Origin: Octopus bimaculoides | Lineage: Eukaryota | Direction of reading: 5' to 3' | NCBI RefSeq assembly: GCF_001194135.2 | Contig: NC_069004.1 | Span: 32,828,319-32,862,800, forward strand | DNA length: 34,482 bases | Shown: piece by piece, positions 873-34,482 of the stretch | How the letters are laid out: every line of letters starts with the position of its first letter | Position numbering within the stretch: position 1 is the first letter of the stretch | Notes under the pieces: model-generated | Database searches by the model: none | What the model was told of the DNA's origin: nothing | The model's input: only the letters and a program-made list of their open reading frames with translations | Position numbers and translations under genes: made by a program

Positions 873-922
873 ACAGACCTCCACATTGTGGTCAAGAAAC
901 AATTAATGAGTAACAAATTAAA
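873..922 (+). CDS. FANCD2: FANCD2 exon E2 (50 nt): TDLHIVVKKQLMSNKL(K); monoubiquitination lysine equivalent at 897-899
   Basis: Pyrimidine tract + tgtag acceptor, AA|gtaagt donor; aligns to human DDMHLVIRK561QLSS. Confidence 0.95.
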
Positions 923-1079: not shown

Positions 1080-1139
1080 GTATAAACAAAATGGAATCAT
1101 TGGTGGTGTTATGTTGGTAAAGAACCTTACACCTGTCAG
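1080..1139 (+). CDS. FANCD2: FANCD2 exon E3 (60 nt): (K)YKQNGIIGGVMLVKNLTPV(S)
   Basis: ttcttgaag acceptor, AG|gtaagt donor; matches human KYKLIGIIGAV; phase 2/2. Confidence 0.93.
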
Positions 1140-1450
1140 GTAAGTTATTTCATTTGGATCTAGAAACCTACCTTGCATCTCTCAGGTATGTTGTCTCCTT
1201 GGGTTTTGAACAACATGCCTGTTGTTGTTTCAATTTGATGAAGATTGCACACCTGTCAGGTATGTTGTATGTAGTTTTGAGTTGGTCAACATCTCACACC
1301 TGGCAGGTAAGTTGTGTAATGTTGATCAAGAACCACACATCTGTCTGTAAATTGTTTCGTGCTGGTGAAGACTTTTATATTTGTCAGGTATATTGTGTGG
1401 TGCTGATCAACCTCTCACACCTGTCAGGCATATTGTGTGATGTTGGTTAA
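1112..1450 (+). repeat. Degenerate ~40-47 bp tandem array derived from the E3 3' end plus 5' splice site
   Basis: Seven copies of gttggt..acacctgtcAG|GT.., with donor-like dinucleotides at 1140, 1186, 1260, 1307, 1347, 1388 and 1428 (GC). Confidence 0.85.
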
Positions 1451-1484
1451 AACCACCATTGTATTACTGGTACTAGTTTGTGCT

Positions 1485-1630
1485 TGAGAAGAGTCGTCAA
1501 ACCAAGTGAAATCATAATTGTGGCCAGTGCCAGTGATATGTAACAGCTCCTGTGCCAGTGGCACGTAAAAGGCACCTTTTCCACTGGCACATAAAAAGCA
1601 CTTTTACCAGTAACATGTGAAAGCACCAAT
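1485..1630 (+). mobile_element. Family C retro-element internal fragment with three GGCACRTAAAARGCAC-like motifs
   Basis: Similar to 3020-3120; motif repeated at ~25 bp spacing. Confidence 0.55.
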
Positions 1631-1829
1631 GTTTTCTTCAAAATATATGTCAGAAGTATAAAGATTTGAATAACTCCTGTGTTTAACTCCATTTCTTAAT
1701 TTATTTATGTTATATATATATATGTATATATACATATGTACACGTGTGTGTGTGTGTGTATGTGTCAGTTTTGTATGTCTCAACAATTTCCTGCAATTCT
1801 TACTGTTTTTGGTTTATTTGCTCCAACAG

Positions 1830-1989
1830 TGCTGATGATAATTTGGTGACACCTGAAAACGTTAAGGATGCCATTACCCTGTTGCAACTGATGAACACCA
1901 GCAGTCTGCAGATGCCCACTGCTCGTGCGCTGTTCATGGACGAGCTGTCCATGGTCATCACCCACACAAAATTACATCTGAAAGTAGAG
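1830..1989 (+). CDS. FANCD2: FANCD2 exon E4 (160 nt): ADDNLVTPENVKDAITLLQLMNTSSLQMPTARALFMDELSMVITHTKLHLKVE
   Basis: caacag acceptor, GAG|gtgagt donor; matches human SLLQLV..ASALYYDEFANLI. Confidence 0.93.
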
Positions 1990-2809: not shown

Positions 2810-3275
2810 GCTTTGAGCCTCACAGAGGCAATAACTTGTGGCTGAGACCTTTGGTGATGTGCTGTGCTTCAGAGGACCCGTCAAGCCAAATGCACCCATT
2901 CTGGTGGCACATAACAAACACCTTTCGAGCGTTGGGACTCACAAAGACAAAGTGGCTGAGTTCCTTTCGAGCATTGGGCTTCATGGAAGCAATGACAGCC
3001 CTTTGACATTATGTCATACTTGAGAAGAAGACCCATCAAGCTGAGCAAAACTGCAGTCATGGCAGATACCAGTGTCACGCAAATGGCACCTCTGCTGGTG
3101 GCACATAAAAGCACCCATTACATTCTCCAAATGGTTGGCATTAGAAAGGGCATCCAGCTGTAGAAACATTGCCAAATCAGACTGGGGCCTGGTGCAGCCT
3201 TCCAGCATGTCAGCCCAGTTAAACCGTCCAACCCATGCCAGCATGGACAACAGCCGTTAAGTGATGATGATGATT
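2810..3275 (+). mobile_element. Family C retro-element, long form with internal ~41 bp units and (GAT)n tail
   Basis: Shared 3' block ggttggcattag..gggcatccagctgtagaa..cccatgccagcatgga..taa(gat)n seen more than 10 times in the window. Confidence 0.75.
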
Positions 3276-3956: not shown

Positions 3957-4237
3957 GTGAGGGAGGAGGAGGATTTTGAAATTTCAACGTTTTTGAATTC
4001 CTATTTTTGTTGTTACCATTTTTTTAAAGCCTTTGTTAATTATAGATTGTCTTCTTAGAATCACTTTTTTTCATGGGAATTACTGTTTATAATGATGTTT
4101 AATGCTAATGAAACAGCTGTTGAGCACATGAATTACTTGTCACCTTAAGCGAGTGTCTTCTATTAAACCCCAGGTTGACTAATGCTTTGTAAGTGAATTA
4201 GATGGAAACTGTATAGAAGCCTGTCCCGTATATATAT

Positions 4238-4420
4238 ATCATCATCATCATTTAACGTCTGCTTTCCATGCTGGCATGGGTTAGATGATATGATTGGAAC
4301 TGTAAACCAGAGAGCTGCACCAGGTTCCAGTCTGATTTGGCATGGTTTCTATGGCTGGATGCCCTTCCTGACTCCAACCACTCTAAGAGTGTAATGGGTG
4401 TTTTTTACGTGCCACTGGCA
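4238..4420 (-). mobile_element. Family C element (reverse)
   Basis: (atc)n tttaacgtc..ccatgctggcatggg..gctggatgcccttcct = reverse complement of the family C tail. Confidence 0.8.
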
Positions 4421-4640
4421 CAGGTTCTTCTATGTGTGTATGTGTGAGAGAGAGAGAGAGTGTGTGTGTATATAGTTCAATACAGAGCAAGTAATTCACG
4501 AGAAAAATAATTTACGAAGAAATAACTTGTGACTCTGTTACTATCTAGTGTAACAATTTAAAAATGATAATATCAGAATTGATAATATAGGCGATTTTAG
4601 GACCCCCCCCCCCAAAAAAAAAGCATTAAATAGCTGAAGG

Positions 4641-7245: not shown

Positions 7246-7854
7246 GTGAGTAGACAGAACTGCTGAACAAAGGTAGCACATGTAGCTTATTGTCATGTAG
7301 CTTATTGTCATGGCAATTCCCAATAAGCTCCACTTGAGTTCATCAAATGATCAAAGGCAATCTAGCCATGACCACCCCATGTTATAATATATCTAGGACT
7401 TCATTTCAACTAATGTTATATTCTAGTGGTTTTGCTGTGAATGTATGCAGAATTGTGCATTATGTGTAAATTTTGCATTTCTTTACTAAGTTTGTGTGCA
7501 TCTATGCAAGTAATCATTTTTCAAATATTTTTAATTAAAAAAGATCTTGATTTCATCTTGAAAATGCTCTGCGTCTGCACATGTTTTTTCCTATTGTCAT
7601 AAAGCATCTGCCCTAGTGACGATGAAGGATGTGATGGGAGGGTAAANNNNNNNNNNNNNNNNNNNNNNNNNNNNNNNNNNNNNNNNNNNNNNNNNNNNNN
7701 NNNNNNNNNNNNNNNNNNNNNNNNNNNNNNNNNNNNNNNNNNNNNNNNNNNNNNNNNNNNNNNNNNNNNNNNNNNNNNNNNNNNNNNNNNNNNNNNNNNN
7801 NNNNNNNNNNNNNNNNNNNNNNNNNNNNNNNNNNNNNNNNNNNNNNNNNNNNNN

Positions 7855-9489: not shown

Positions 9490-9872
9490 TAAACAGGGCA
9501 AGCACCATTCAAGCATGATCGTTTGCCAGTGCCACCTGACTGGCTCCCGTGCCATTGACACATAGAAAGCACCATTCAAGCGTGATCATTGCCAGTGCCA
9601 CCTGACTGGCTCCCGTGCCATTGACACATAAAAAGCACCATTCAAGCGTGATCATTGTCAATGCTGTCTGACTGGCCCCTGTGCCAGTGGAACATAAACA
9701 GCACCTGCTATACTCTCGGAGTGGTTGGCATTAGGAAGCGCATCCAGCTGTAGAAACTCTGCCAGATCAGATTGAGCCTGGTTCAGCCTCCTGGCTCGCC
9801 AGCCCTCAGTTAAACCATCCAACCCATGCCAGCATGGAAAGCGGACATTAAATAACGATGATGATGATAATG
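9490..9872 (+). mobile_element. Family C element with three internal 66-67 bp tandem units
   Basis: agcaccattcaag starts at 9501, 9568 and 9634; standard family C tail with (gat)n. Confidence 0.85.
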
Positions 9873-9981: not shown

Positions 9982-10063
9982 AGAATTAACGCTTGATGTT
10001 TTAGACATTCTGTTGGTTGGCAAAATCATGAGTAAAGATCTCGATTCCCAAATGAACACCGAG
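9982..10063 (+). CDS. FANCD2: FANCD2 exon E13 (82 nt): ELTLDVLDILLVGKIMSKDLDSQMNTE
   Basis: taccag acceptor, GAG|gtttgt donor; matches human RELDIEVFSIL..LDTEMHTE. Confidence 0.94.
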
Positions 10064-11429: not shown

Positions 11430-11770
11430 TTTGTGTATTAAGGCTACCACTGGTTTCATTTTAAGGAATACCTCAACATTCATTGAGTTTATCACATGGA
11501 ATTTTGTTCGTCTTCATTTTGGAGACAAACACCAAAATTTCACATGATCATCAGCATTTGATGTCTGCCTTCCATACTGGTATGTGTTGGCTGGTTTGAT
11601 AGGAGCTGGCGAGGTACAAGATTCACCAGACTATGTCTATGCCTATTTTGGCAAGGTTTTTTATGGCTGGATGTCCTTCCTAACATCAACCACACAGCAG
11701 AGTGGACTACTGAGTGCTTTTTGCATGGCAAGGTATTAACATGAAACCACTGGTAGCCTTAATACACAAA
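11430..11770. mobile_element. Fold-back/MITE remnant with 30-bp inverted arms, containing a family C insertion (11543-11730, reverse)
   Basis: 11430-11459 and 11741-11770 are reverse complements at 29/30 positions. Confidence 0.7.
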
Positions 11771-12197: not shown

Positions 12198-12600
12198 TAG
12201 TTTCAGTCATTGGATAGCAGCCATGCTGGGGCACTTCCTTGAAGGGTCAAACAAGTTGGCCCCATTACTCATTTTTGGATCTGCTACTTACCCTATCAGT
12301 CTGTTTTGCCAAATCGCTAAATTGAGGGGACATAAACAAATCTACACCAATTGTCAAGTAGTGGTAAGGAAAAAACACACACACACACATATAGATACAT
12401 ACATGTGTATGTATGTATATATATGTGTGTATGTATATATATCATCATCATCGTTTAACGTCCGTTTTCCATGCTTGCATGGGTTGGACGTTCTACTGGG
12501 GTCTGGGAAGCCAGGAGGCTGCACCAGGCTCCAGTCTGATTTGGCAGTGTTTCTTCAGCTGGATGCCCTTCCTAACGCCAACCACTCTAAGAGTGTAGTG
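12198..12600 (-). mobile_element. Reverse SINE family A 3' part (12198-12375) followed by reverse family C (12441-12600)
   Basis: Same diagnostic blocks as the other copies. Confidence 0.75.
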
Positions 12601-14743: not shown

Positions 14744-14990
14744 CATCATCGTTTAACGTCCACCTTTGATGCTGGCATGGGTTGGACAGTTAGACAGGAG
14801 CCTGCACCAGACTTCCGTGTCTGTTTTGGCAGGGTTTTTACAGCTGGATGCCCTTCCTAACACCAACTACCCATCGTCTATATATAGATTCATACAGGCA
14901 TGGCTCTGGGATAAGAATCTTACTTCCCAACCTCATAGTTCCAAGTTCAGTCCCCCTTTGTGGCATTTTGGGCAAGTGTGTTCTACTACT
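14744..14990. mobile_element. Reverse family C (14744-14868) and forward family A head (14893-14990)
   Basis: Diagnostic blocks of both families. Confidence 0.65.
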
Positions 14991-15096
14991 TATTTGAGAA
15001 CTCTAGTATTTTTTTATTGTTGTTTCGTTTTGTTTTGTTTATTTTGTTTATATTTCATTTGTTCCACTTCACTGAACCTGGATGCGCTTCATTTAG

Positions 15097-21051: not shown

Positions 21052-21120
21052 GTAGGGACCAAATTATACAAATTTTCTAGACTTCAGTCGAGAGGTCCTT
21101 ATTTTTATTTTCTGTTTCAG

Positions 21121-21159
21121 AAATTTGATGGTTTTTCAAATCTAGGGACTGCATTAAAA
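21121..21159 (+). other. FANCD2: Tandem duplicate of E23 (copy b, 39 nt): KFDGFSNLGTALK; alternative or pseudo-exon
   Basis: Same tctgtttcag acceptor; 35/39 nt identical to copy a; donor degraded to AAA|gcagag. Confidence 0.75.
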
Positions 21160-21208
21160 GCAGAGGCCAAATTATACAGACCTCAGTTGAGAAGTCCTTA
21201 TTTTGCAG

Positions 21209-21450
21209 GCTCACAGGTGCTGGTGCCAAGTAAAAAAAAAAAAAAAAAAAAAAACCCTGCGCTGGCACCATGTATAATGCACTGGTGCTACGTAAAAAGC
21301 ACCCAATGCAATCTATGAAGTGGTTGGTGTTGGGAAGGGCATCCAGCTGTAAGAACCCTGCCAAAACAGTTGCAGCAGTCTGATGCAGGTTCCGGTCAAA
21401 CTGTCCCACCCATGCCAGCATGGAAGGCAGACATTAAACAATGATGATGG
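21209..21450 (+). mobile_element. Family C element with internal poly(A)
   Basis: tacgtaaaaagcaccc..ggttggtgttgggaagggcatccagctg..catgccagcatgga..(gat)n. Confidence 0.78.
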
Positions 21451-22127: not shown

Positions 22128-22410
22128 GTTTTAGTCATTTGACTGTGGCCATGCTGGGGCACCGTCTAGAAGAATTTTTACGTGCCACCGGCATAGGTGC
22201 CTGTTATGTGTCAGTCAGTGTGTGTCTATGTCTGTGTTTGTCACTGTTTGACAACCGGTGCTGGTGTGTTTACATCCCTGTAATGTAGATAGAATAAGTA
22301 CCAGGTTTAAAAAAACAAATGTGTTCTACTGTCAATTCATTTGACTAAAAAATCCTTCAAGGCCATGCCCCAGCATGGCCACTATCTAATGACTGAAATA
22401 AGTAAAAGAT
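22128..22410. mobile_element. Reverse family A tail (22128-22180) and forward family A 3' half (22225-22410)
   Basis: gccatgctggggcacc and its reverse complement gccccagcatggcc. Confidence 0.7.
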
Positions 22411-27689: not shown

Positions 27690-30600
27690 AATAAACATAA
27701 ATAAATAAATAAACATATAAATAAATAAATATATATGAATAAATATAATGAACGAATGAACAAACGAAAGAACGATCAAACGCACGTACGTACGTAAGCA
27801 CATATGTACGTAGGTACGTACGTACGTACGAATGAATTAATGTACGTACGTACGTACCTACGGACAAAAGAGCGAACGAATGAACAAACTAACGACCGAA
27901 CGCACGTACGTACGAACGGACAGATGTGAGTACGTACGTACGTACGAAAAACGAACGAACGAAAGAACGTACGTACGTTCATAAGTAAGTACGTACGAAC
28001 GATCCAAAGAACGAACGTACGTACATTACTAAATACGAACGAACGAACGAACGTACGTGCGTTAGAATGACCGAACGTACGTAGGCGCGTACATTCGTTA
28101 CTTTGTTCGTTTGTTCGTTCGTTCGTACGTACATATGTACCTACGTTCGTTCATTCGATTGTTCTTTCGTTCGTTTGTTCGTACGTACATACGTACGTTC
28201 GTTCTTTCAATCTTTCGCTCGCTCGTTCGTTCGTACGTACGTACTTTCGTTCGTTCTTTCGTTTGTTCGTTCGTTCTTTCGTTTGTTCGTTCGTTCGTTC
28301 AATCGTTCGTTCGTTCGTTTGTTCCGTCGTACGTACGCTTGTTCGTTCGTTCGTACGTATGTACCTATATTTGTTCGTTAATTCGTTTGTTCGATCGTTC
28401 GTTCCTTCTTTCGTTCATTCGTTCGTTCGTTAATTCTTTCCTTCGTTAGTTCTTACGTACGTACTTAGGTTCTTTCATTCGTTTCTTTCATGTTTCGTAC
28501 GTACGTACATACGTGCGTTCGTTCGTTCGTTCGTTCCTACGTACGTACGTGCGTACATTCGTTCGTTCATTTGTTTGTTCGTTCCTTCGTTGTTACGTAC
28601 GTACGGATGGATTTACATTCGTTCGTACGTACGTAATTACGTTCGTTCGTTCTTACGTACTTTCTTTCGTTCGTTCGATCGTTCGTTCGTACTTACGTAC
28701 GTACGTACCTTCGTTCGTTCGTACTTACGTACATACGTACGTTCGTTCGTTCTTTCGTTCGTTCGTTCGTTCTTTCGTTCGTTCGTTCGTTCGTTCTTAC
28801 GTTCATTCGTTACTTCGTTCTTTCCTTCGTTTGCTCGTTCGATCGTTCGTATGTACGTACGTTCATTCATTCGTACGTACGTACGCTCATTCGTACGTAC
28901 GTACGCTCGTTCGTACGTTCATTCATGCGTATGTACGTACATACGTTCAATCGTTCTTTCGTTCGTTCGTACGTACGGACGTACGTTAGTTCTTTCGTTC
29001 GTAGGTACGTACGTTCGTTCGCTCGTTCCTACGTACGGATGTATGTACGTAACGTCGTTTGTTTTTTTGTTCGGTCTTTCTTTCGTTCGCACATGCGTTC
29101 GTTCCTACGTACGTACGTTTGTTCATTCGTTCCTTCGTTTGTTCGTACATACGTACGTATGTACGTTCTTTCGTTTGCTCGATCGTTCGTTCGTTCGTCC
29201 ATTCTTTCGTTACTTTGTTCGTTCTTTCGATCGTTTGTTCATTCGTTTATTTCTTTCGATCGTTCGTTCGTTTGTTTCGTTCGTTCGTTCCTTCGCACGT
29301 ACGTACGTACGTTTCTTCGTTCGTTCGTTCTTTCGTACGTACGTACATTCTTTCGCTCAATCGTTCGTTCATTCTTTCCTACGTTCGTTCGTTCGTACGT
29401 GCGTACGTTCGTTAGTTTGTTCGTTCGTTCGCTCGTTCGTTCGTGCATTCTTTCGTACGTACGTTCGTTCTTTCGTTCGTACGTTCTTTAGTTTGTTCGT
29501 TCGTTCATACGTACGTACATATGTACCTACTTGTGTACATTCGTTTGTTCGTTAGTTCGTTCGTTCGTTTGTTCGTTCGTACATACGTAAGTTCAATTCT
29601 TTATTCGTTCGTTTTTTATTCGTACCTACGTACGTTCATTCGTTCAATCGTTCGTTAGTTCTTTTGTTCTTTCGTACGTACGTAAATCCGTACATACGTG
29701 CGGACGTTCGTTCGTTGCCTCGTTCGTTAGTTCTTTCGTTCTTTCGTACGTACGTACGTACGATCGTTCGTTCATTCGTTCGTTTCATTCGTTCCTTCGT
29801 CCGTCCGTACGTTCGTTCGTTCTGACATACGTTCGTTCGTACGTACGTACGTTCGTTCGTTCTTTCGTTCGTTCGTAATTACGTTCCTTCTTTCATTTAT
29901 TCGTTCGTAGTACGAACTTACGTACGCACGTTCTTTCCTTCCTTCGATTTGTTCATACGTACGTTCGTTCGTACGTACGTACCTTCGTTCGTTCGTACAT
30001 TCGTACGTACGTGCGTTCGTTCATTCGTTCGTTCATTCGTTCGTTCATTCATACAGATGTACGTACGAATATACGCACGCTCGTTCGTTCATTCATACAT
30101 ATGAAACTTCGAATATACGTACGTTCGTTCGTTCGTTCTTTCGTTAGTTCGTTCGCTCATTCGTACGTATGTACGATCATTCGTTCGTTCGTTCGTTCGT
30201 TCCTTCGCACGTACGTACGTACATTTGTTCGTTCGTTCGTTCTTTCGTACATACGTACACTCTTTCGTTCAATCGTTCGTTCATTCTTTCGTACGTTCGT
30301 TCGTTCGGACGTACGTGCGTACGTTCGTTAGCTTGTTCGTTCGTTCGCTCGTTCGTTCGTACGTTCTTTCGCACGTACGTACGTACGTACGAACGAATGA
30401 ACGAAAGAACGTTCGTCCGTTAATTCGTACGTACGTGCGTACGTTCGTTAGTTTGTTCGTTCGTTCATACGTACGTACGTGCATATGTACCTACTTATGT
30501 ACGTTCATTTGTTCGTTCGTTCGTTCGTACATACGTACGATCAATATTTTGTTCGTTCGTTTGTTCGATCGTTCGTTCGATCTTACATACGTACTTACGT

Positions 30601-33600
30601 ACGTAAATCCGTACATACGTGCGGACGTTCGTTCGATCGTTGCCTCGTTCGTTAGTTCTTTCATTCTTTAGTACGGACGTACATACGTTCGTTCATTAGG
30701 TCGTTCGTTCGTTCGTTCGTTTCATTCGTTCGTTTGTCCGTCCGTACGTTCGTTCGTTCTGACATACGTTCGTTCGTACGTACTTACGTTCGTTCGTTCT
30801 TTTGTTCGTTCGTTCTTTCGTTCGTTCGTAATAACGTTCCTTCTTTCGTTTATTCGTTCGTAAGTACCAGCTTACTTACGTACGCACGTTCTTTCCTTCC
30901 TTCCATCATTTGTTCATACGTACGATCGTTCGTACGTACGTACGTTCGTTCGTACGTACGTTCGTTCGTACGTACGTTCGTTCGTTCGTACGTACGTGCG
31001 TTCGTTCGTAAGTACCAGCTTACTTACGTATGCACGTTCTTTCCTTCCTTCCATCATTTGTTCATACGTACGATCGTTCGTACGTACGTACGTTCGTTCG
31101 TACGTACGTTCGTTCGTACGTACGTTCGTTCGTTCGTACGTACGTNNNNNNNNNNGTTCGTACGTACGTTCGTTCGTACGTACGTTCGTTCGTTCGTACG
31201 TACGTGCGTTCGTTCGCACATTCATACGTACGGACGTACCGTCGTTTGTTTGTTCATATCGTCCATTCGCTCACTCGTACGTACGTACGTACGATCATTC
31301 GTTCGTTCGTTCGTTCGTTCGTTTGTTCGTTCGTTCATTCGTTCGCTCGTTCGTTCGTACGTTCTTTCATACATACGTGCGTTCTTTCGTTCATTCGTTC
31401 GTACGTACGTACGTTCGTTCGTTCGTTCATACGTACGTGCGTACGTTCGTTAGTTTGTTCGTTCGTTTTTTTCGTACCTACGTACGTTCGTTCGTTCAAT
31501 CGTTCATTCGTTCGTTCTTACGTTCGTACGTACGTTCGTCCGTTTCGTTGTTCGTTCGTTTGTTCCATCGTTCGTTCGTTCTTGCATACGTACTTACGTA
31601 CGTAAATCCGTACAAACGTGCGGACGTTCGTTCGTTAGTTCTTTCGTTCTTTCGTACGTACGTACGTTCGTTCATTAGGTCGTTCGTTCGTTCGTCCGTT
31701 TCATTCGTTCGTTCGTCCGTCCGTACGTTCGTTCGTTCTGACATACGTTCGTTCGTACGTACGTACGTTCGTTCGTACGTACGTACGTTCGTTCGTTCGA
31801 TCTTACATACGTACTTACGTACGTACGTGCGGACGTTCGTTCGTTAGTTCTTTTGTTCTTTCGTACGGACGTACGTTCGTTCATTAGGTCGTTCGTTCGT
31901 TCGTTCGTNNNNNNNNNNNNNNNNNNNNNNNNNNNNNNNNNNNNNNNNNNNNNNNNNNNNNNNNNNNNNNNNNNNNNNNNNNNNNNNNNNNNNNNNNNNN
32001 NNNNNNNNNNNNNNNNNNNNNNNNNNNNNNNNNNNNNNNNNNNNNNNNNNNNNNNNNNNNNNNNNNNNNNNNNNNNNNNNNNNNNNNNNNNNNNNNNNNN
32101 NNNNNNNNNNNNNNNNNNNNNNNNNNNNNNNNNNNNNNNNNNNNNNNNNNNNNNNNNNNNNNNNNNNNNNNNNNNNNNNNNNNNNNNNNNNNNNNNNNNN
32201 NNNNNNNNNNNNNNNNNNNNNNNNNNNNNNNNNNNNNNNNNNNNNNNNNNNNNNNNNNNNNNNNNNNNNNNNNNNNNNNNNNNNNNNNNNNNNNNNNNNN
32301 NNNNNNNNNNNNNNNNNNNNNNNNNNNNNNNNNNNNNNNNNNNNNNNNNNNNNNNNNNNNNNNNNNNNNNNNNNNNNNNNNNNNNNNNNNNNNGAACATA
32401 CGCACGCTCGTTCGTTCCTTCATACATATGTGAGTTCGAATATACGTACGTTCGTTCGTTCGTTCTTTCTTTTCTTCATTCGTTAGTTCGTTCATATCGT
32501 TCGTTCGCTCATTCGTACTTACGTACATAAGTACGTACGATCATTCGTTTGTTCGTTCGTTCCTTCGCACGTACGTACGTACTTTGTTCGTTCGTTCGTT
32601 CGTTCGTACATACGTACATTTTTTCATTCAATCGTTCGTTCATTCTTTCGTACCGTCATTCGTTCCTACGTACGTGCGTACGTTCATTAGTTTGTTTGTT
32701 CGTTCGTTCGCTCGTTCGTTCGTACGTTCTTTCGTTCATTCGTTCGTACGTACGTACGTACGTACGTACGTACGTTCGTTCGTACGTACGTACGTTCGTT
32801 CGTTCGTTCATACGTACGTGCGTACGTTCGTTAGTTTGTTCGTTCGTTCATACGTACGGACGTACATATGTACCTACTTATGTACGTTCGTTTGTTCGTT
32901 CGTTCGTTCGTTTGTTCGTTCGTTCGTACATACGTGCGTTCAATTCTTTGTTCGTTCGTTTTTTTTTCGTACCTACGTACGTTCGGTCGTTCAATCGTTC
33001 GTTAGTTCGTTCTTTCGTTCGTACGTACGTTCGTCCGTTTCGTTGTTCGTTCGTTTGTTCGATCGTTCGTTCGATCTTACATACGTACTTACGTACGTAA
33101 ATCCGTACAAACGTGCGGACGTTCGTTCGTTGCCACGTTCGTTAGTTCTTTCGTTTTATCGTACGTACGTTNNNNNNNNNNTCGTTCGTTGCCACGTTCG
33201 TTAGTTCTTTCGTTTTATCGTACGTACGTTCGTTCATTAGGTCGTTCGTCCGTCCGTCCGTTCGTTCGTTCTGGCATACGTTCGTTCGTACGTACGTACA
33301 TTCGTTCGTTCGTTCGTTCATTCATATATATGTACGTAGGAACACACGTTCGTTCTTTCGTTCGTTCGTAATTACGTTCCTTCTTTCGTTTATTCGTTCG
33401 TACGTACGTGCGTACGTTCGTTAGTTTGTTCGTTTGCTCGCTCGTTCCTTCATACGTTCTTTCGCACGTTCGTTAGTTTGTGCGTTCGTTCATACGTACG
33501 TACGTACATTTGTACCTACTTATGTACGTTCGTTTGTTCGTTCGTTTGTTCGTTTGTTCGTTCGTACATACGTACGTTCAATTCTTTGTTCGTTCGTTTT

Positions 33601-34482
33601 TTTTGTACCTACGTACGTTCGTTCGTTCAATCGTTCGTTCGTTCGTTCTTTCGTTCGTACGTACGTTCGTCCGTTTCTTTGTTCGTTCGTTTGTTCGATC
33701 GTTCGTTCGATCTTACATACGTACTTAAGTACGTAAATCCGTACATACGTGCGGACGTTCGTTCGTTAGTTAGTTCTTTCGTTCTTTCGTTAGTTCTTTC
33801 GTTCTTTCGTACGGACGTACGTACGTTCGTTCATTAGGTCGTTCGTTTGTCCGTCCGTACGTTCTGACATACGTTCGTTCGTTCTGACATACGCTCGTTC
33901 GTTCGTTCATTTATATATATGTACGTAGGAACATACGTACGTTGCTTCGTTCGTGCGTTCGTTCGTTCGTTCATTTATATATATGTACGTAGGAACATAC
34001 GTACGTTCGTTCGTTCGTTCGTTCGTTCGATTTTTCAATCGTTCGTTAGTTCGTTCTTTCGTTCGTACGTACGTTCGTCAGTTTCTTTGAACGTTCGTTT
34101 GTTCGATCGTTCGTTCGTTCTTACATACGTACTTACGTACGTAAATCCGTACATACGTGCAGACGTTCGTTCGTTGCCTCATTCGTTCGATTTTTCGGAA
34201 TTACGTTCCTTCTATCGTTTATTCTTTCGTAAGTACGAGCTTACTTACGTACGCACGTTCTTTCCTTCCTTCGATCATTTGGTCATACGTACGATCGTTC
34301 GTTCGTACGTACGTACGTTCATTCATACGTATGTACTTACGAACATACGTACGCTCGTTCGTTCATATATACATATGTAAGTTCGAATATACGTACGTTC
34401 GTTCGTACGTACGTACGTTCGTTCGTTCGATCTTACATACGTACTTACGTACGTACGTGCGGACGTTCGTTCGTTAGTTCTT
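27690..34482. repeat. Large CpG-rich tetranucleotide-periodic satellite, (TTCG/TACG)n plus variants, running off the window end
   Basis: Nearly all sequence parses into 4-mers (TTCG, TACG, TTTG, TTCA, TTCT, TTAG, TACA); the proximal ~400 bp is in the opposite (GAAC) orientation; longer landmark motifs recur. Confidence 0.97.

What the first reader, a model, noticed from the sequence alone, without database searches (positions are those of the whole stretch)
1112..1450. Array of seven duplicated 5' splice donors copied from the end of exon E3 (possible poison-donor or recursive-splice array)
The E3 end plus donor (gttggtaaagaaccttacacctgtcAG|GTAAGT) is repeated as decayed 40-74 nt units, with CAG|GTATGT at 1186 and 1260, CAG|GTAAGT at 1307, CAG|GTATAT at 1388, and decayed copies at 1347 and 1428. 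Extending E3 to any downstream donor hits an in-frame TAA (1141-1143), truncating FANCD2 about 30 residues after the ubiquitinated lysine. The AG|GT core is better preserved than the spacers, and 1171-1191 looks like a ratchet point (pyrimidines-CAG|GTATGT). This could be an NMD-coupled rheostat or splice-site decoys.
Basis: partly seen in the sequence, partly recalled or inferred. Interest (0 to 1): 0.7.

Follow-up and report, generated by a model that had tools for sequence, protein, structure and literature searches.

The report
Old minisatellite repeating a splice donor
In the octopus FANCD2 gene, a decayed 40-base tandem repeat starts inside an exon and runs into the next intron, so it copies the exon's splice donor several times; repeats like this are already known in human genes such as F7, and nothing here shows the copies are used or have a function.

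Summary
The window is Octopus bimaculoides FANCD2. Exon E3 is 1080-1139, and the RefSeq protein uses the 1139|1830 junction.

From about 1106 to 1478 lies a degenerate tandem array of about 40-nt units (37-47 nt):
- Eight units are recognisable, plus one unit-length stretch (U3) with no significant similarity.
- There is a weak 121-nt (three-unit) periodicity.
- The first unit is the last 34 nt of E3 plus the donor.

Of the copied donors, four still look functional:
- 1307: CAG|GTAAGT, identical to the real donor.
- 1186 and 1260: CAG|GTATGT.
- 1388: CAG|GTATAT.

The copies at 1347 and 1428 are dead.

No shuffle reproduces the periodicity. The unit occurs nowhere else in the 34 kb. None of the gene's other 17 donors has such copies.

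The functional reading is not supported:
- The donor core is not significantly better kept than the rest of the unit (0.81 vs 0.71, p=0.30).
- The in-frame TAA follows automatically from a phase-2 GTAAGT donor.
- Recursive splicing is implausible in a 690-nt intron, because the first step would remove only 46 nt.

The closest known kind is a minisatellite whose first monomer spans an exon-intron boundary (human F7 IVS7, IFI6, CBS, LMNB2, PDGFA). In F7, LMNB2 and PDGFA only the most upstream site is used; in IFI6 and CBS the two nearest copies are also used. Verdict: a new member of a known kind, probably a neutral relic. No RNA data or orthologous introns were available here.

The parts
873..922 (+). 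FANCD2 exon E2. It holds the lysine (codon 897-899, octopus K514) that aligns with human K561, the monoubiquitinated residue.
   Evidence: tblastn of XP_014781670.1, exact junction search, alignment to human FANCD2 chains.
1080..1139 (+). FANCD2 exon E3 (60 nt; ...YKQNGIIGGVMLVKNLTPV + AG of Ser). Its last 34 nt are the exonic part of repeat unit 1.
   Evidence: The peptide is contained exactly in XP_014781670.1. The only junctions that reproduce the protein are 922|1080 and 1139|1830. Pfam FancD2 E=7.8e-8.
1137..1145 (+). Authentic 5' splice site cag|GTAAGT, a 9/9 match to the consensus.
   Evidence: PWM 12.4; U1 duplex -12.1 kcal/mol.
1141..1143 (+). In-frame TAA met by any transcript that reads past 1139 (AGG TAA). 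It is part of the donor consensus itself.
   Evidence: Sequence; reading frame.
1106..1146 (+). Unit U1: exon end plus donor plus 7 nt of intron. It is the source copy.
   Evidence: Best nhmmer score to the unit profile (31 bits, E 7e-9). Highest summed similarity to the other units (118).
1147..1192 (+). Unit U2 (46 nt) with pseudo-donor cag|GTATGT at 1186. The 12-mer 1183-1194 can pair with 1210-1221.
   Evidence: E 2.8e-5; PWM 8.5; inverted repeat I9; hairpin in the MFE; lowest accessibility at short range.
1193..1229 (+). U3: a unit-length stretch with no donor and no significant similarity to the units in either orientation. Its 1210-1221 (ACAACATGCCTG) is complementary to the donor 12-mers of U2, U4 and U8.
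   Evidence: E 0.15; forward 8.5 and reverse 11.0, against shuffle mean 9.2; I9-I11.
1230..1266 (+). Unit U4 with pseudo-donor cag|GTATGT at 1260.
   Evidence: E 3.5e-6; PWM 8.5.
1267..1313 (+). Unit U5 with pseudo-donor cag|GTAAGT at 1307. Its 9-mer is identical to the authentic donor.
   Evidence: E 1.1e-7; PWM 12.4, 99.9th percentile of all GT.
1314..1353 (+). Unit U6. Its donor has decayed to tct|GTAAAT at 1347.
   Evidence: E 5.4e-6; PWM -1.2.
1354..1394 (+). Unit U7 with the weak pseudo-donor cag|GTATAT at 1388.
   Evidence: E 5.4e-6; PWM 6.0.
1395..1434 (+). Unit U8. Its donor has decayed to cag|GCATAT at 1428.
   Evidence: E 2.2e-7; PWM 1.7.
1435..1478 (+). Unit U9, the last and partly decayed unit (ctg|GTACTA at 1470). 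This is the end of the array.
   Evidence: (E 0.012).
1830..1989 (+). FANCD2 exon E4. Its acceptor (…ctccaacag|) is the partner of the 1140 donor. The intron is 690 nt.

Best explanation
This is an old, degenerate minisatellite whose first monomer spans the E3 exon-intron boundary of octopus FANCD2.

**Origin (inferred).** A segment of about 40 nt (the last 34 nt of the exon, the donor and 7 nt of intron) was duplicated head to tail. The likely cause is replication slippage or unequal exchange, perhaps first as single units and then as a three-unit block of about 121 nt. This pushed eight further copies into the intron.

**Decay (partly shown).** Unit 1 stayed under selection because it codes for protein and is spliced. 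The intronic copies have drifted to about 68-83% identity with it. Four still carry a donor-like sequence, and one of those is perfect.

**Splicing (inferred).** The most upstream donor (1140), which closes the 60-nt exon, is the one used. The downstream copies are silent pseudo-sites, or are used at most at noise level. Any product of such use would carry the TAA at 1141-1143 and be unproductive.

The array most likely has no function of its own.
For: **Shown.**
- A tandem periodicity of 40/81/121 nt that no shuffle reaches.
- The units align, and the unit profile finds them and nothing else in the 34 kb.
- Only this one of the gene's 18 donors has such copies.
- U1 is the unit closest to the profile and to all the others, as expected if it alone is constrained.
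- The exon end aligns with human FANCD2 residues without an insertion, so it is ancestral coding sequence and not an exonised repeat.
- The RefSeq protein XP_014781670.1 uses 1139|1830, the only junction that keeps the frame.
- Donor positions are kept no better and no worse than the rest of the unit (0.78 vs 0.71, p=0.30). Four of 8 cores are intact against about 2 expected (P=0.12). Both fit neutral decay.

**From the literature.** The same arrangement is described for human F7 IVS7 (37-bp units), IFI6, CBS, LMNB2 and PDGFA.
- In F7, LMNB2 and PDGFA only the authentic site is used.
- In IFI6 and CBS two pseudo-sites are also used.
- In F7 the pseudo-sites are functional but silent because the most upstream site wins (PMC1557585).
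Against: - No RNA data were available, so silence of the pseudo-donors is inferred. The only direct evidence is one predicted RefSeq model.
- In the F7 minigenes, perfect-consensus pseudo-sites placed downstream of a weak authentic site were used in about 70-90% of the products. The 1307 copy is perfect. Here the authentic site is perfect too, so some use of 1307 cannot be excluded.
- No orthologous intron could be fetched, so the age and neutrality of the array rest on within-array statistics with few cells and low power.
- Copy-number polymorphism, typical of the human examples, could not be examined.
Confidence: 0.75

Rival explanations
1. Regulated poison donors. The pseudo-donors are used in a controlled fraction of transcripts, which then carry the TAA at 1141-1143. 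Those transcripts are degraded by NMD or encode a truncated FANCD2, and this tunes FANCD2 output.
For: Four donor-like copies remain, one identical to the real donor. All extensions keep the stop in frame. In IFI6 and CBS the two nearest pseudo-sites are used, and perfect pseudo-sites were used in F7 minigenes.
Against: There is no excess conservation of the donor core within the array. The stop follows automatically from the phase and the consensus. The authentic donor is already perfect and the most upstream, which is the winning position in F7. The pseudo-donor nearest to it (1186) sits in a 12-bp stem. Nothing shows usage.
Confidence: 0.08
2. Intronic U1-binding array. The pseudo-donors bind U1 snRNP without being spliced. 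This helps define the short 60-nt exon, or suppresses premature cleavage, in the way engineered U1s targeted to the intron downstream of an exon can do.
For: Several sites with strong predicted U1 pairing lie within 250 nt downstream of a short exon. That U1 bound downstream of an exon can promote its inclusion is established knowledge, not tested here.
Against: E3 already has a perfect donor and a good acceptor (PWM 13 range), so no help seems needed. The sites decay like the rest of the unit. All of them have low predicted accessibility.
Confidence: 0.07
3. Structured RNA. The partly palindromic units pair with each other and with the exon end to form double-stranded RNA. This could serve, for example, as a substrate for the extensive ADAR editing of cephalopods, or to mask splice sites.
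For: Many inverted repeats lie within the array. The 401-nt fold has z = -2.3. Local hairpins occur at 1183-1221 and 1388-1468 (the latter z = -3.1).
Against: The z-scores are modest. The structures follow from the repeat's own partial palindrome. The region of the authentic donor is not unusually structured (z = +0.4). No Rfam family matches. No editing data are available.
Confidence: 0.04
4. Recursive splicing. The intron is removed stepwise at AG|GT ratchet points such as 1186.
For: 1186 has a pyrimidine-rich tract and scores like a weak acceptor (PWM 7.7, 97.5th percentile), directly followed by a donor.
Against: The first step would excise 46 nt, against a minimum of 157 nt for the introns of this gene seen here. 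The intron is only 690 nt, whereas recursive sites are known from very long introns (established knowledge). The other AG|GT copies have poor acceptor scores of 2.4-5.7.
Confidence: 0.01
5. Dispersed repeat or assembly artefact. The units belong to a transposon or satellite family that only by chance resembles the exon end, or the array is a mis-assembly.
For: The window is rich in dispersed and tandem repeats and has 12 N gaps. A dispersed-repeat fragment lies directly downstream at 1521-1623.
Against: No copy of the unit occurs elsewhere in the 34 kb on either strand. Similarity runs through 34 nt of coding exon. The units differ by 20-30%, so short reads would place them uniquely. There is no N before 2330.
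Confidence: 0.03

Closest known systems
Human F7 intron 7 minisatellite (37-bp VNTR, 5-9 monomers, first monomer spanning the exon 7-IVS7 boundary); Borensztajn et al. 2006, PMC1557585
   Same: It is a tandem array in an intron with a unit of about 40 nt. The first monomer contains the exon end and the donor, so the donor is reiterated downstream. The productive mRNA uses the most upstream copy.
   Different: - The F7 monomers are near-identical and vary in copy number; the octopus units are 68-83% identical and two or three donors are dead.
- The F7 monomer takes 4 nt of exon; here it takes 34 nt.
- The F7 donor is weak (TGG|gtgggt, CV 74); here it is a perfect CAG|GTAAGT.
- Silence of the pseudo-sites was shown by experiment in F7; here it is inferred.
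Human IFI6 (6-16) intron 2 and CBS intron 13 minisatellites (as cited in PMC1557585: Turri et al. 1995; Yang et al. 2000; Lievers et al. 2001)
   Same: They are boundary-spanning minisatellites that provide multiple splice donors.
   Different: In those genes the two pseudo-sites nearest the authentic donor are used constitutively. Here any such use would hit a stop codon at once, and no use is documented.
Human LMNB2 (100-bp monomer) and PDGFA intron 4 (81-bp monomer) repeats that reiterate the exon/intron junction (cited in PMC1557585)
   Same: [quoted passage not shown]
   Different: The monomers are longer and there are more copies (10-18). They are in vertebrates.
Recursive splice sites (ratchet points) of long Drosophila and vertebrate introns
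   Same: A juxtaposed AG|GTAAGT-type sequence lies inside an intron.
   Different: Those sites sit in introns of tens of kilobases, are single and conserved, and follow strong pyrimidine tracts. Here the intron is 690 nt and the sites are by-products of a repeat.
Poison exons and NMD-coupled unproductive splicing (for example in SR protein genes)
   Same: Alternative splice-site use would bring in a premature stop.
   Different: Those elements are highly conserved and their use is documented and regulated. Here there is neither conservation evidence nor usage evidence.

Membership tests
Boundary-spanning minisatellite that reiterates the 5' splice site (F7 / IFI6 / CBS / LMNB2 / PDGFA type) | Head-to-tail tandem array of a 10-100-nt unit inside an intron | tested here: met
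   Periodicity at 40/81/121 nt exceeds all 500 shuffles. Eight units are recognised by the unit profile at E <= 0.012. Alignment A1.
Boundary-spanning minisatellite that reiterates the 5' splice site (F7 / IFI6 / CBS / LMNB2 / PDGFA type) | The first monomer contains the exon-intron junction | tested here: met
   U1 = 1106-1146 = 34 nt of E3 + cag|GTAAGTT. It is 80% identical to U5 and U6 across both the exonic and the intronic part. The exon boundary is fixed by the protein.
Boundary-spanning minisatellite that reiterates the 5' splice site (F7 / IFI6 / CBS / LMNB2 / PDGFA type) | The donor sequence is reiterated in the intron as potentially functional pseudo-sites | tested here: met
   1307 is identical to the donor. 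1186 and 1260 match 8/9 and 1388 matches 7/9, with PWM scores inside the range of the gene's real donors. 1347 and 1428 are dead.
Boundary-spanning minisatellite that reiterates the 5' splice site (F7 / IFI6 / CBS / LMNB2 / PDGFA type) | The authentic (most upstream) site is the one used, alone or with the nearest pseudo-sites | not testable with these tools
   Only a predicted RefSeq protein that uses 1139|1830 is available. There are no RNA-seq junction data.
Boundary-spanning minisatellite that reiterates the 5' splice site (F7 / IFI6 / CBS / LMNB2 / PDGFA type) | Copy number varies between alleles (VNTR) | not testable with these tools
   Only a single assembly is available. The high divergence of the units suggests that the array is no longer being homogenised (inference).
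Recursive splice site | Lies in a very long intron that is removed in steps | tested here: not met
   The intron is 690 nt (1140-1829).
Recursive splice site | Strong 3' splice site (pyrimidine tract + AG) fused to a 5' splice site | tested here: inconclusive
   1186 has an acceptor PWM of 7.7 (real acceptors span 6.1-14.8). 1260, 1307 and 1388 score 2.4-5.7.
Recursive splice site | The first-step intron is long enough to be spliced | tested here: not met
   1140-1185 is 46 nt. The shortest intron of this gene in the window is 157 nt.
Regulated unproductive splicing (poison exon or donor coupled to NMD) | The alternative site introduces a premature stop | tested here: met
   AGG TAA at 1138-1143 is in frame for every downstream donor. 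However, this follows automatically from a phase-2 GTAAGT donor.
Regulated unproductive splicing (poison exon or donor coupled to NMD) | The alternative sites are conserved above their surroundings | tested here: not met
   Within the array, the donor at -3..+6 is 0.78 identical against 0.71 for the rest (p=0.30), and the core 0.81 against 0.71 (p=0.30). Conservation across species could not be tested.
Regulated unproductive splicing (poison exon or donor coupled to NMD) | Documented, NMD-sensitive use of the site | not testable with these tools
   No transcript data. The protein collections hold no product that reads into the array.

The most novel reading that the evidence does not exclude
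The array is kept because several U1-binding or splice-competent donor copies downstream of the exon next to the ubiquitination site let the cell divert a tunable share of FANCD2 pre-mRNA into stop-containing, NMD-targeted transcripts. It would then be a repeat-born dosage control of a DNA-repair gene in a cephalopod.
Probability: 0.07. Interest if true: 0.55.

Novelty: new member of a known kind. Interest (0 to 1): 0.25.

Why it matters
The array adds an invertebrate, and apparently old, example to a small class of natural 'experiments' in 5' splice-site choice. These are minisatellites that place identical or near-identical donors in a row behind the authentic one.

This case has a feature that the F7 case lacks naturally: a perfect-consensus authentic site competes with a perfect-consensus copy 167 nt downstream. 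Junction counts from existing octopus RNA-seq would show whether the 'most upstream site wins' rule, worked out in mammalian cells, also holds in a cephalopod.

For genome annotation it is a warning. Splice-site predictors will see four good donors here, and only one of them gives a protein. For FANCD2 biology nothing special is shown.

Tried and rejected
- **Orthologous introns through proteins.** The first search, with the 73-aa E3+E4 peptide, found nothing although XP_014781670.1 contains it exactly, so the word index is patchy. A 515-aa composite of the window's exons found only the two O. bimaculoides models and a scorpion protein. XP_014781670.1 is not on record in the contig collection.
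- **Array reading frame as a query.** The frame 1121-1447, searched against 1.84 billion representatives, gave only a bacterial repeat protein by chance. No related loci could therefore be fetched.
- **Exact-match metagenome scan** for the E3 end: no hits.
- **Scorpion FANCD2 for intron position.** Its model starts downstream of this region.
- **Tandem Repeats Finder** at minimum score 30 misses the array.
- **Rfam and tRNA scans.** Nothing at the gathering thresholds. The weak matches are microsatellite noise.
- **Does structure hide the pseudo-donors but not the real one?** Inconclusive. All sites have low predicted accessibility, and 1140 is only 2-9 times more open than 1307, depending on the span allowed.
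- **Is U3 an inverted unit?** Rejected. Neither orientation beats shuffles.
- **A strict three-unit higher-order repeat.** Only weak support: mean unit-pair score 12.5 at distance 3 against about 9 at distances 1-2.
- **Turri et al. 1995 (PMC306954)** is not held in the library.

Full report
**Locus**

The window is part of the Octopus bimaculoides FANCD2 gene, on the + strand.
- A composite of its exons retrieves XP_014781670.1 and XP_014781671.1, both annotated 'Fanconi anemia group D2 protein-like'.
- tblastn places their residues on the window. Most exons match at 96-100% identity, and lower values come from alignments that run past exon ends.
- The E3+E4 peptide matches Pfam FancD2 (E 7.8e-8) and human FANCD2 structures.
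- An exact search for junctions that reproduce the protein gives one solution per intron. E2 is 873-922, E3 is 1080-1139 and E4 is 1830-1989.
- The intron that holds the finding is 1140-1829, 690 nt.
- The lysine that aligns with human K561 is in E2 (codon 897-899), in VVKKQL against human VIRKQL.

**The observation**

| Position | Sequence | State |
|---|---|---|
| 1140 | cag\|GTAAGT | authentic donor |
| 1186 | cag\|GTATGT | pseudo-donor |
| 1260 | cag\|GTATGT | pseudo-donor |
| 1307 | cag\|GTAAGT | pseudo-donor |
| 1388 | cag\|GTATAT | pseudo-donor |
| 1347 | tct\|GTAAAT | decayed |
| 1428 | cag\|GCATAT | decayed |

Reading through 1139 gives AGG TAA (1138-1143). The truncated product would end 28 residues after the K561-equivalent lysine.

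The clustering is far beyond chance:
- Five of the 11 plus-strand CAGGTA of the 34-kb window lie in 250 nt, where about 0.07 are expected. Poisson P is about 2e-8, or about 1e-6 if the real donor is left out.
- The base-match autocorrelation of 1100-1480 peaks at lags 121, 81 and 40. Its maximum (0.454) is reached by none of 500 dinucleotide-preserving shuffles (mean 0.349, sd 0.013, maximum 0.404).
- As a control I took the 41-nt boundary segment of each of the gene's 18 donors in the window and looked for copies in the next 400 nt. E3's boundary has seven (scores 14-22). The others have none, or a single low-complexity hit.

**Anatomy**

The array runs from about 1106 to 1478 and consists of units of about 40 nt (37-47 nt):
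- U1 1106-1146
- U2 1147-1192
- U3 1193-1229
- U4 1230-1266
- U5 1267-1313
- U6 1314-1353
- U7 1354-1394
- U8 1395-1434
- U9 1435-1478

The consensus is GTnTnGTGTTGGTnAAnAnnCTCACAnCTGTCAGGTAnGTT.

A profile of the unit recovers U1, U2 and U4-U8 at E from 7e-9 to 3e-5, U9 at 0.012 and U3 at 0.15. It finds nothing else in the window on either strand (the next hits have E >= 1).

U3 has the length and position of a unit but no significant similarity in either orientation.

Pairwise identity among the good units is about 63-83%.

Lag 121 is the strongest, and units three apart are on average more alike than neighbours (12.5 against about 9). This gives weak support for a late duplication of a three-unit block.

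Tandem Repeats Finder does not report the array, since its units are too diverged.

**Direction of copying**

U1 is the last 34 nt of E3 plus the donor and 7 nt of intron.
- It is the best match to the profile and has the highest summed similarity to the other units (118, against 29-101 for the others). That is what is expected if U1 alone has been held in place by selection while the copies drifted.
- The residues encoded by the exonic part (GVMLVKNLTPVS) align with human AVTMAGIMAADRS with no insertion in octopus. The exon end is therefore ancestral coding sequence, not a repeat unit that became exonic.

I conclude that the boundary segment was duplicated into the intron. The mechanism (slippage or unequal exchange) is inferred.

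**State of the copied donors**

I scored the sites against the gene's own donors (a PWM built on 17 donor positions, one of them, 7249, entered 3 nt off; the true site is 7246) and against the 5' end of U1 snRNA.
- 1307 equals the authentic site (9/9, PWM 12.4, -12.1 kcal/mol), which is better than most real donors of the gene.
- 1186 and 1260 score 8.5, at the 98.7th percentile of all GT.
- 1388 scores 6.0.
- 1347, 1428 and 1470 are dead.

So four live pseudo-donors remain, not seven.

**Signs of selection on the copies**

There are none.
- Identity to U1 at donor positions -3..+6 is 0.78 against 0.71 for the rest of the unit (Fisher p=0.30).
- For AG|GT alone it is 0.81 against 0.71 (p=0.30).
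- Leaving out U3 and U9 changes nothing (p=0.14-0.17).
- Four of eight intact cores compares with about two expected at the overall decay rate (P=0.12).

The donors are neither preferentially kept nor preferentially destroyed. The test has little power, since it rests on eight copies.

The 'poison' stop is not a designed feature either. With a phase-2 intron, AG|GTAAGT reads AGG TAA in any gene.

**Recursive splicing**

The AG at 1185 has an acceptor-like tract (PWM 7.7; the real acceptors span 6.1-14.8). The other copies score 2.4-5.7. However, the first step would remove 46 nt, while the shortest intron of the gene in this window is 157 nt, and the whole intron is only 690 nt. Recursive sites are known from very long introns (established knowledge). 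I consider this reading excluded for practical purposes.

**RNA structure**

The units are partly palindromic, so many inverted repeats exist.
- The 401-nt region folds at -116.5 kcal/mol, z = -2.3.
- The pseudo-donor nearest the real one (1183-1194) pairs over 12 bp with 1210-1221 in U3. This appears in both the local and the long fold, and this site has the lowest short-range accessibility.
- The real donor's surroundings are not unusually structured (z = +0.4).
- Overall, accessibility does not separate the real donor cleanly from the copies.

This is a possible contribution to silencing and nothing more.

**What is known**

The arrangement is a described kind. Borensztajn et al. [quoted passage not shown] Their examples are:
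- Human F7 IVS7: 37-bp monomer, 5-9 copies, only the most upstream site used.
- IFI6 (6-16): 25 pseudo-sites, the two nearest ones used.
- CBS IVS13: 15-20 repeats, two pseudo-sites used.
- PDGFA: 81-bp monomer, only the authentic site used.

Their 50 minigenes showed three things:
- The F7 pseudo-sites are functional.
- They are not used as long as a functional site lies upstream of them, even when improved to a consensus value of 91.
- Only perfect-consensus copies were used (about 70-90%), and that was against a weak authentic site (CV 74).

In the octopus the authentic site is itself perfect and the most upstream. The expectation is therefore that it dominates, although some use of 1307 cannot be excluded.

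The octopus array differs from the human cases in three ways:
- It is old and degenerate.
- It takes 34 nt rather than 4 nt of exon.
- It lies in an invertebrate.

**Verdict**

The structural half of the interpretation (copies of the E3 end) is right. The functional half is unsupported for the poison-donor rheostat and contradicted for recursive splicing. The most likely reading (0.75) is a neutral, decaying boundary-spanning minisatellite whose pseudo-donors are silent or used at noise level.

What could not be done here is decisive: junction counts from octopus RNA-seq and comparison with the orthologous intron of other octopods. All routes to related sequence failed.

Novelty: a new member of a known kind. 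Interest is low to moderate.

Noticed in passing
window 27780-34482: More than 6.5 kb of 4-nt satellite lies downstream of the gene. The + strand reads (GAAC/ACGA mixed with ACGT)n up to about 28085. It then switches to the reverse complement, (TTCG/CGTT mixed with ACGT)n, which runs to the end of the window. There is therefore an inverted junction near 28085-28095. The satellite has higher-order periods of 28-59 nt and several N gaps.
   Followed up: partly
window 7246-7251 and about 10000-10060; N gap 7647-7854: RefSeq splits this single FANCD2 gene into two 'FANCD2-like' proteins. XP_014781670.1 ends ...CLAGE by reading into the intron at 7246 (GGT GAG TAG). XP_014781671.1 starts at an internal Met (MSKDLDSQMNTE) of the exon that aligns with human FRELDIEVF...DTEMHTE. 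Exons between them are probably lost in the assembly gap.
   Followed up: partly
window 1521-1623; also 9500-9705, 3069-3114, 4388-4424, 22175-22213: Directly downstream of the array lie four 26-nt units (GTGCCAGTGGCACGTAAAAGGCACC-like). They are related to a 66-nt x 3.1 tandem repeat at 9500-9705 (89% matches) and to fragments elsewhere in the window. This is a dispersed repeat family unrelated to the 40-nt unit.
   Followed up: partly
window 4197-4391, 11548-11736, 12395-12595, 14757-14994, and minus-strand copies such as 21080-21433: A dispersed element recurs that translates to ...GSSLIWHGFYGWMPFLTPTTLRV-like open frames. It is probably a SINE or transposon family that fills the introns of this gene.
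   Followed up: no
window 1129, 1249, 1296, 1417 (ACACCTG); unit core ACCTGTCAGGT: The best-conserved part of the unit is a 5+5 palindrome (ACCTG-T-CAGGT). It contains CACCTG, an E2-box-type motif, in four units. This is probably just inherited from the codons ACA CCT GTC AG.
   Followed up: no
window 1154-1450: A 98-codon open frame runs through the whole array because the unit lacks stops in that frame. It has no relatives among 1.84 billion representative proteins apart from a chance match to a bacterial repeat protein, so it is not a gene.
   Followed up: yes
window 1700-1765: (TA)n and (GT)n microsatellites lie 65-130 nt upstream of the E4 acceptor. They give weak, sub-threshold Rfam miRNA matches that are noise.
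   Followed up: yes
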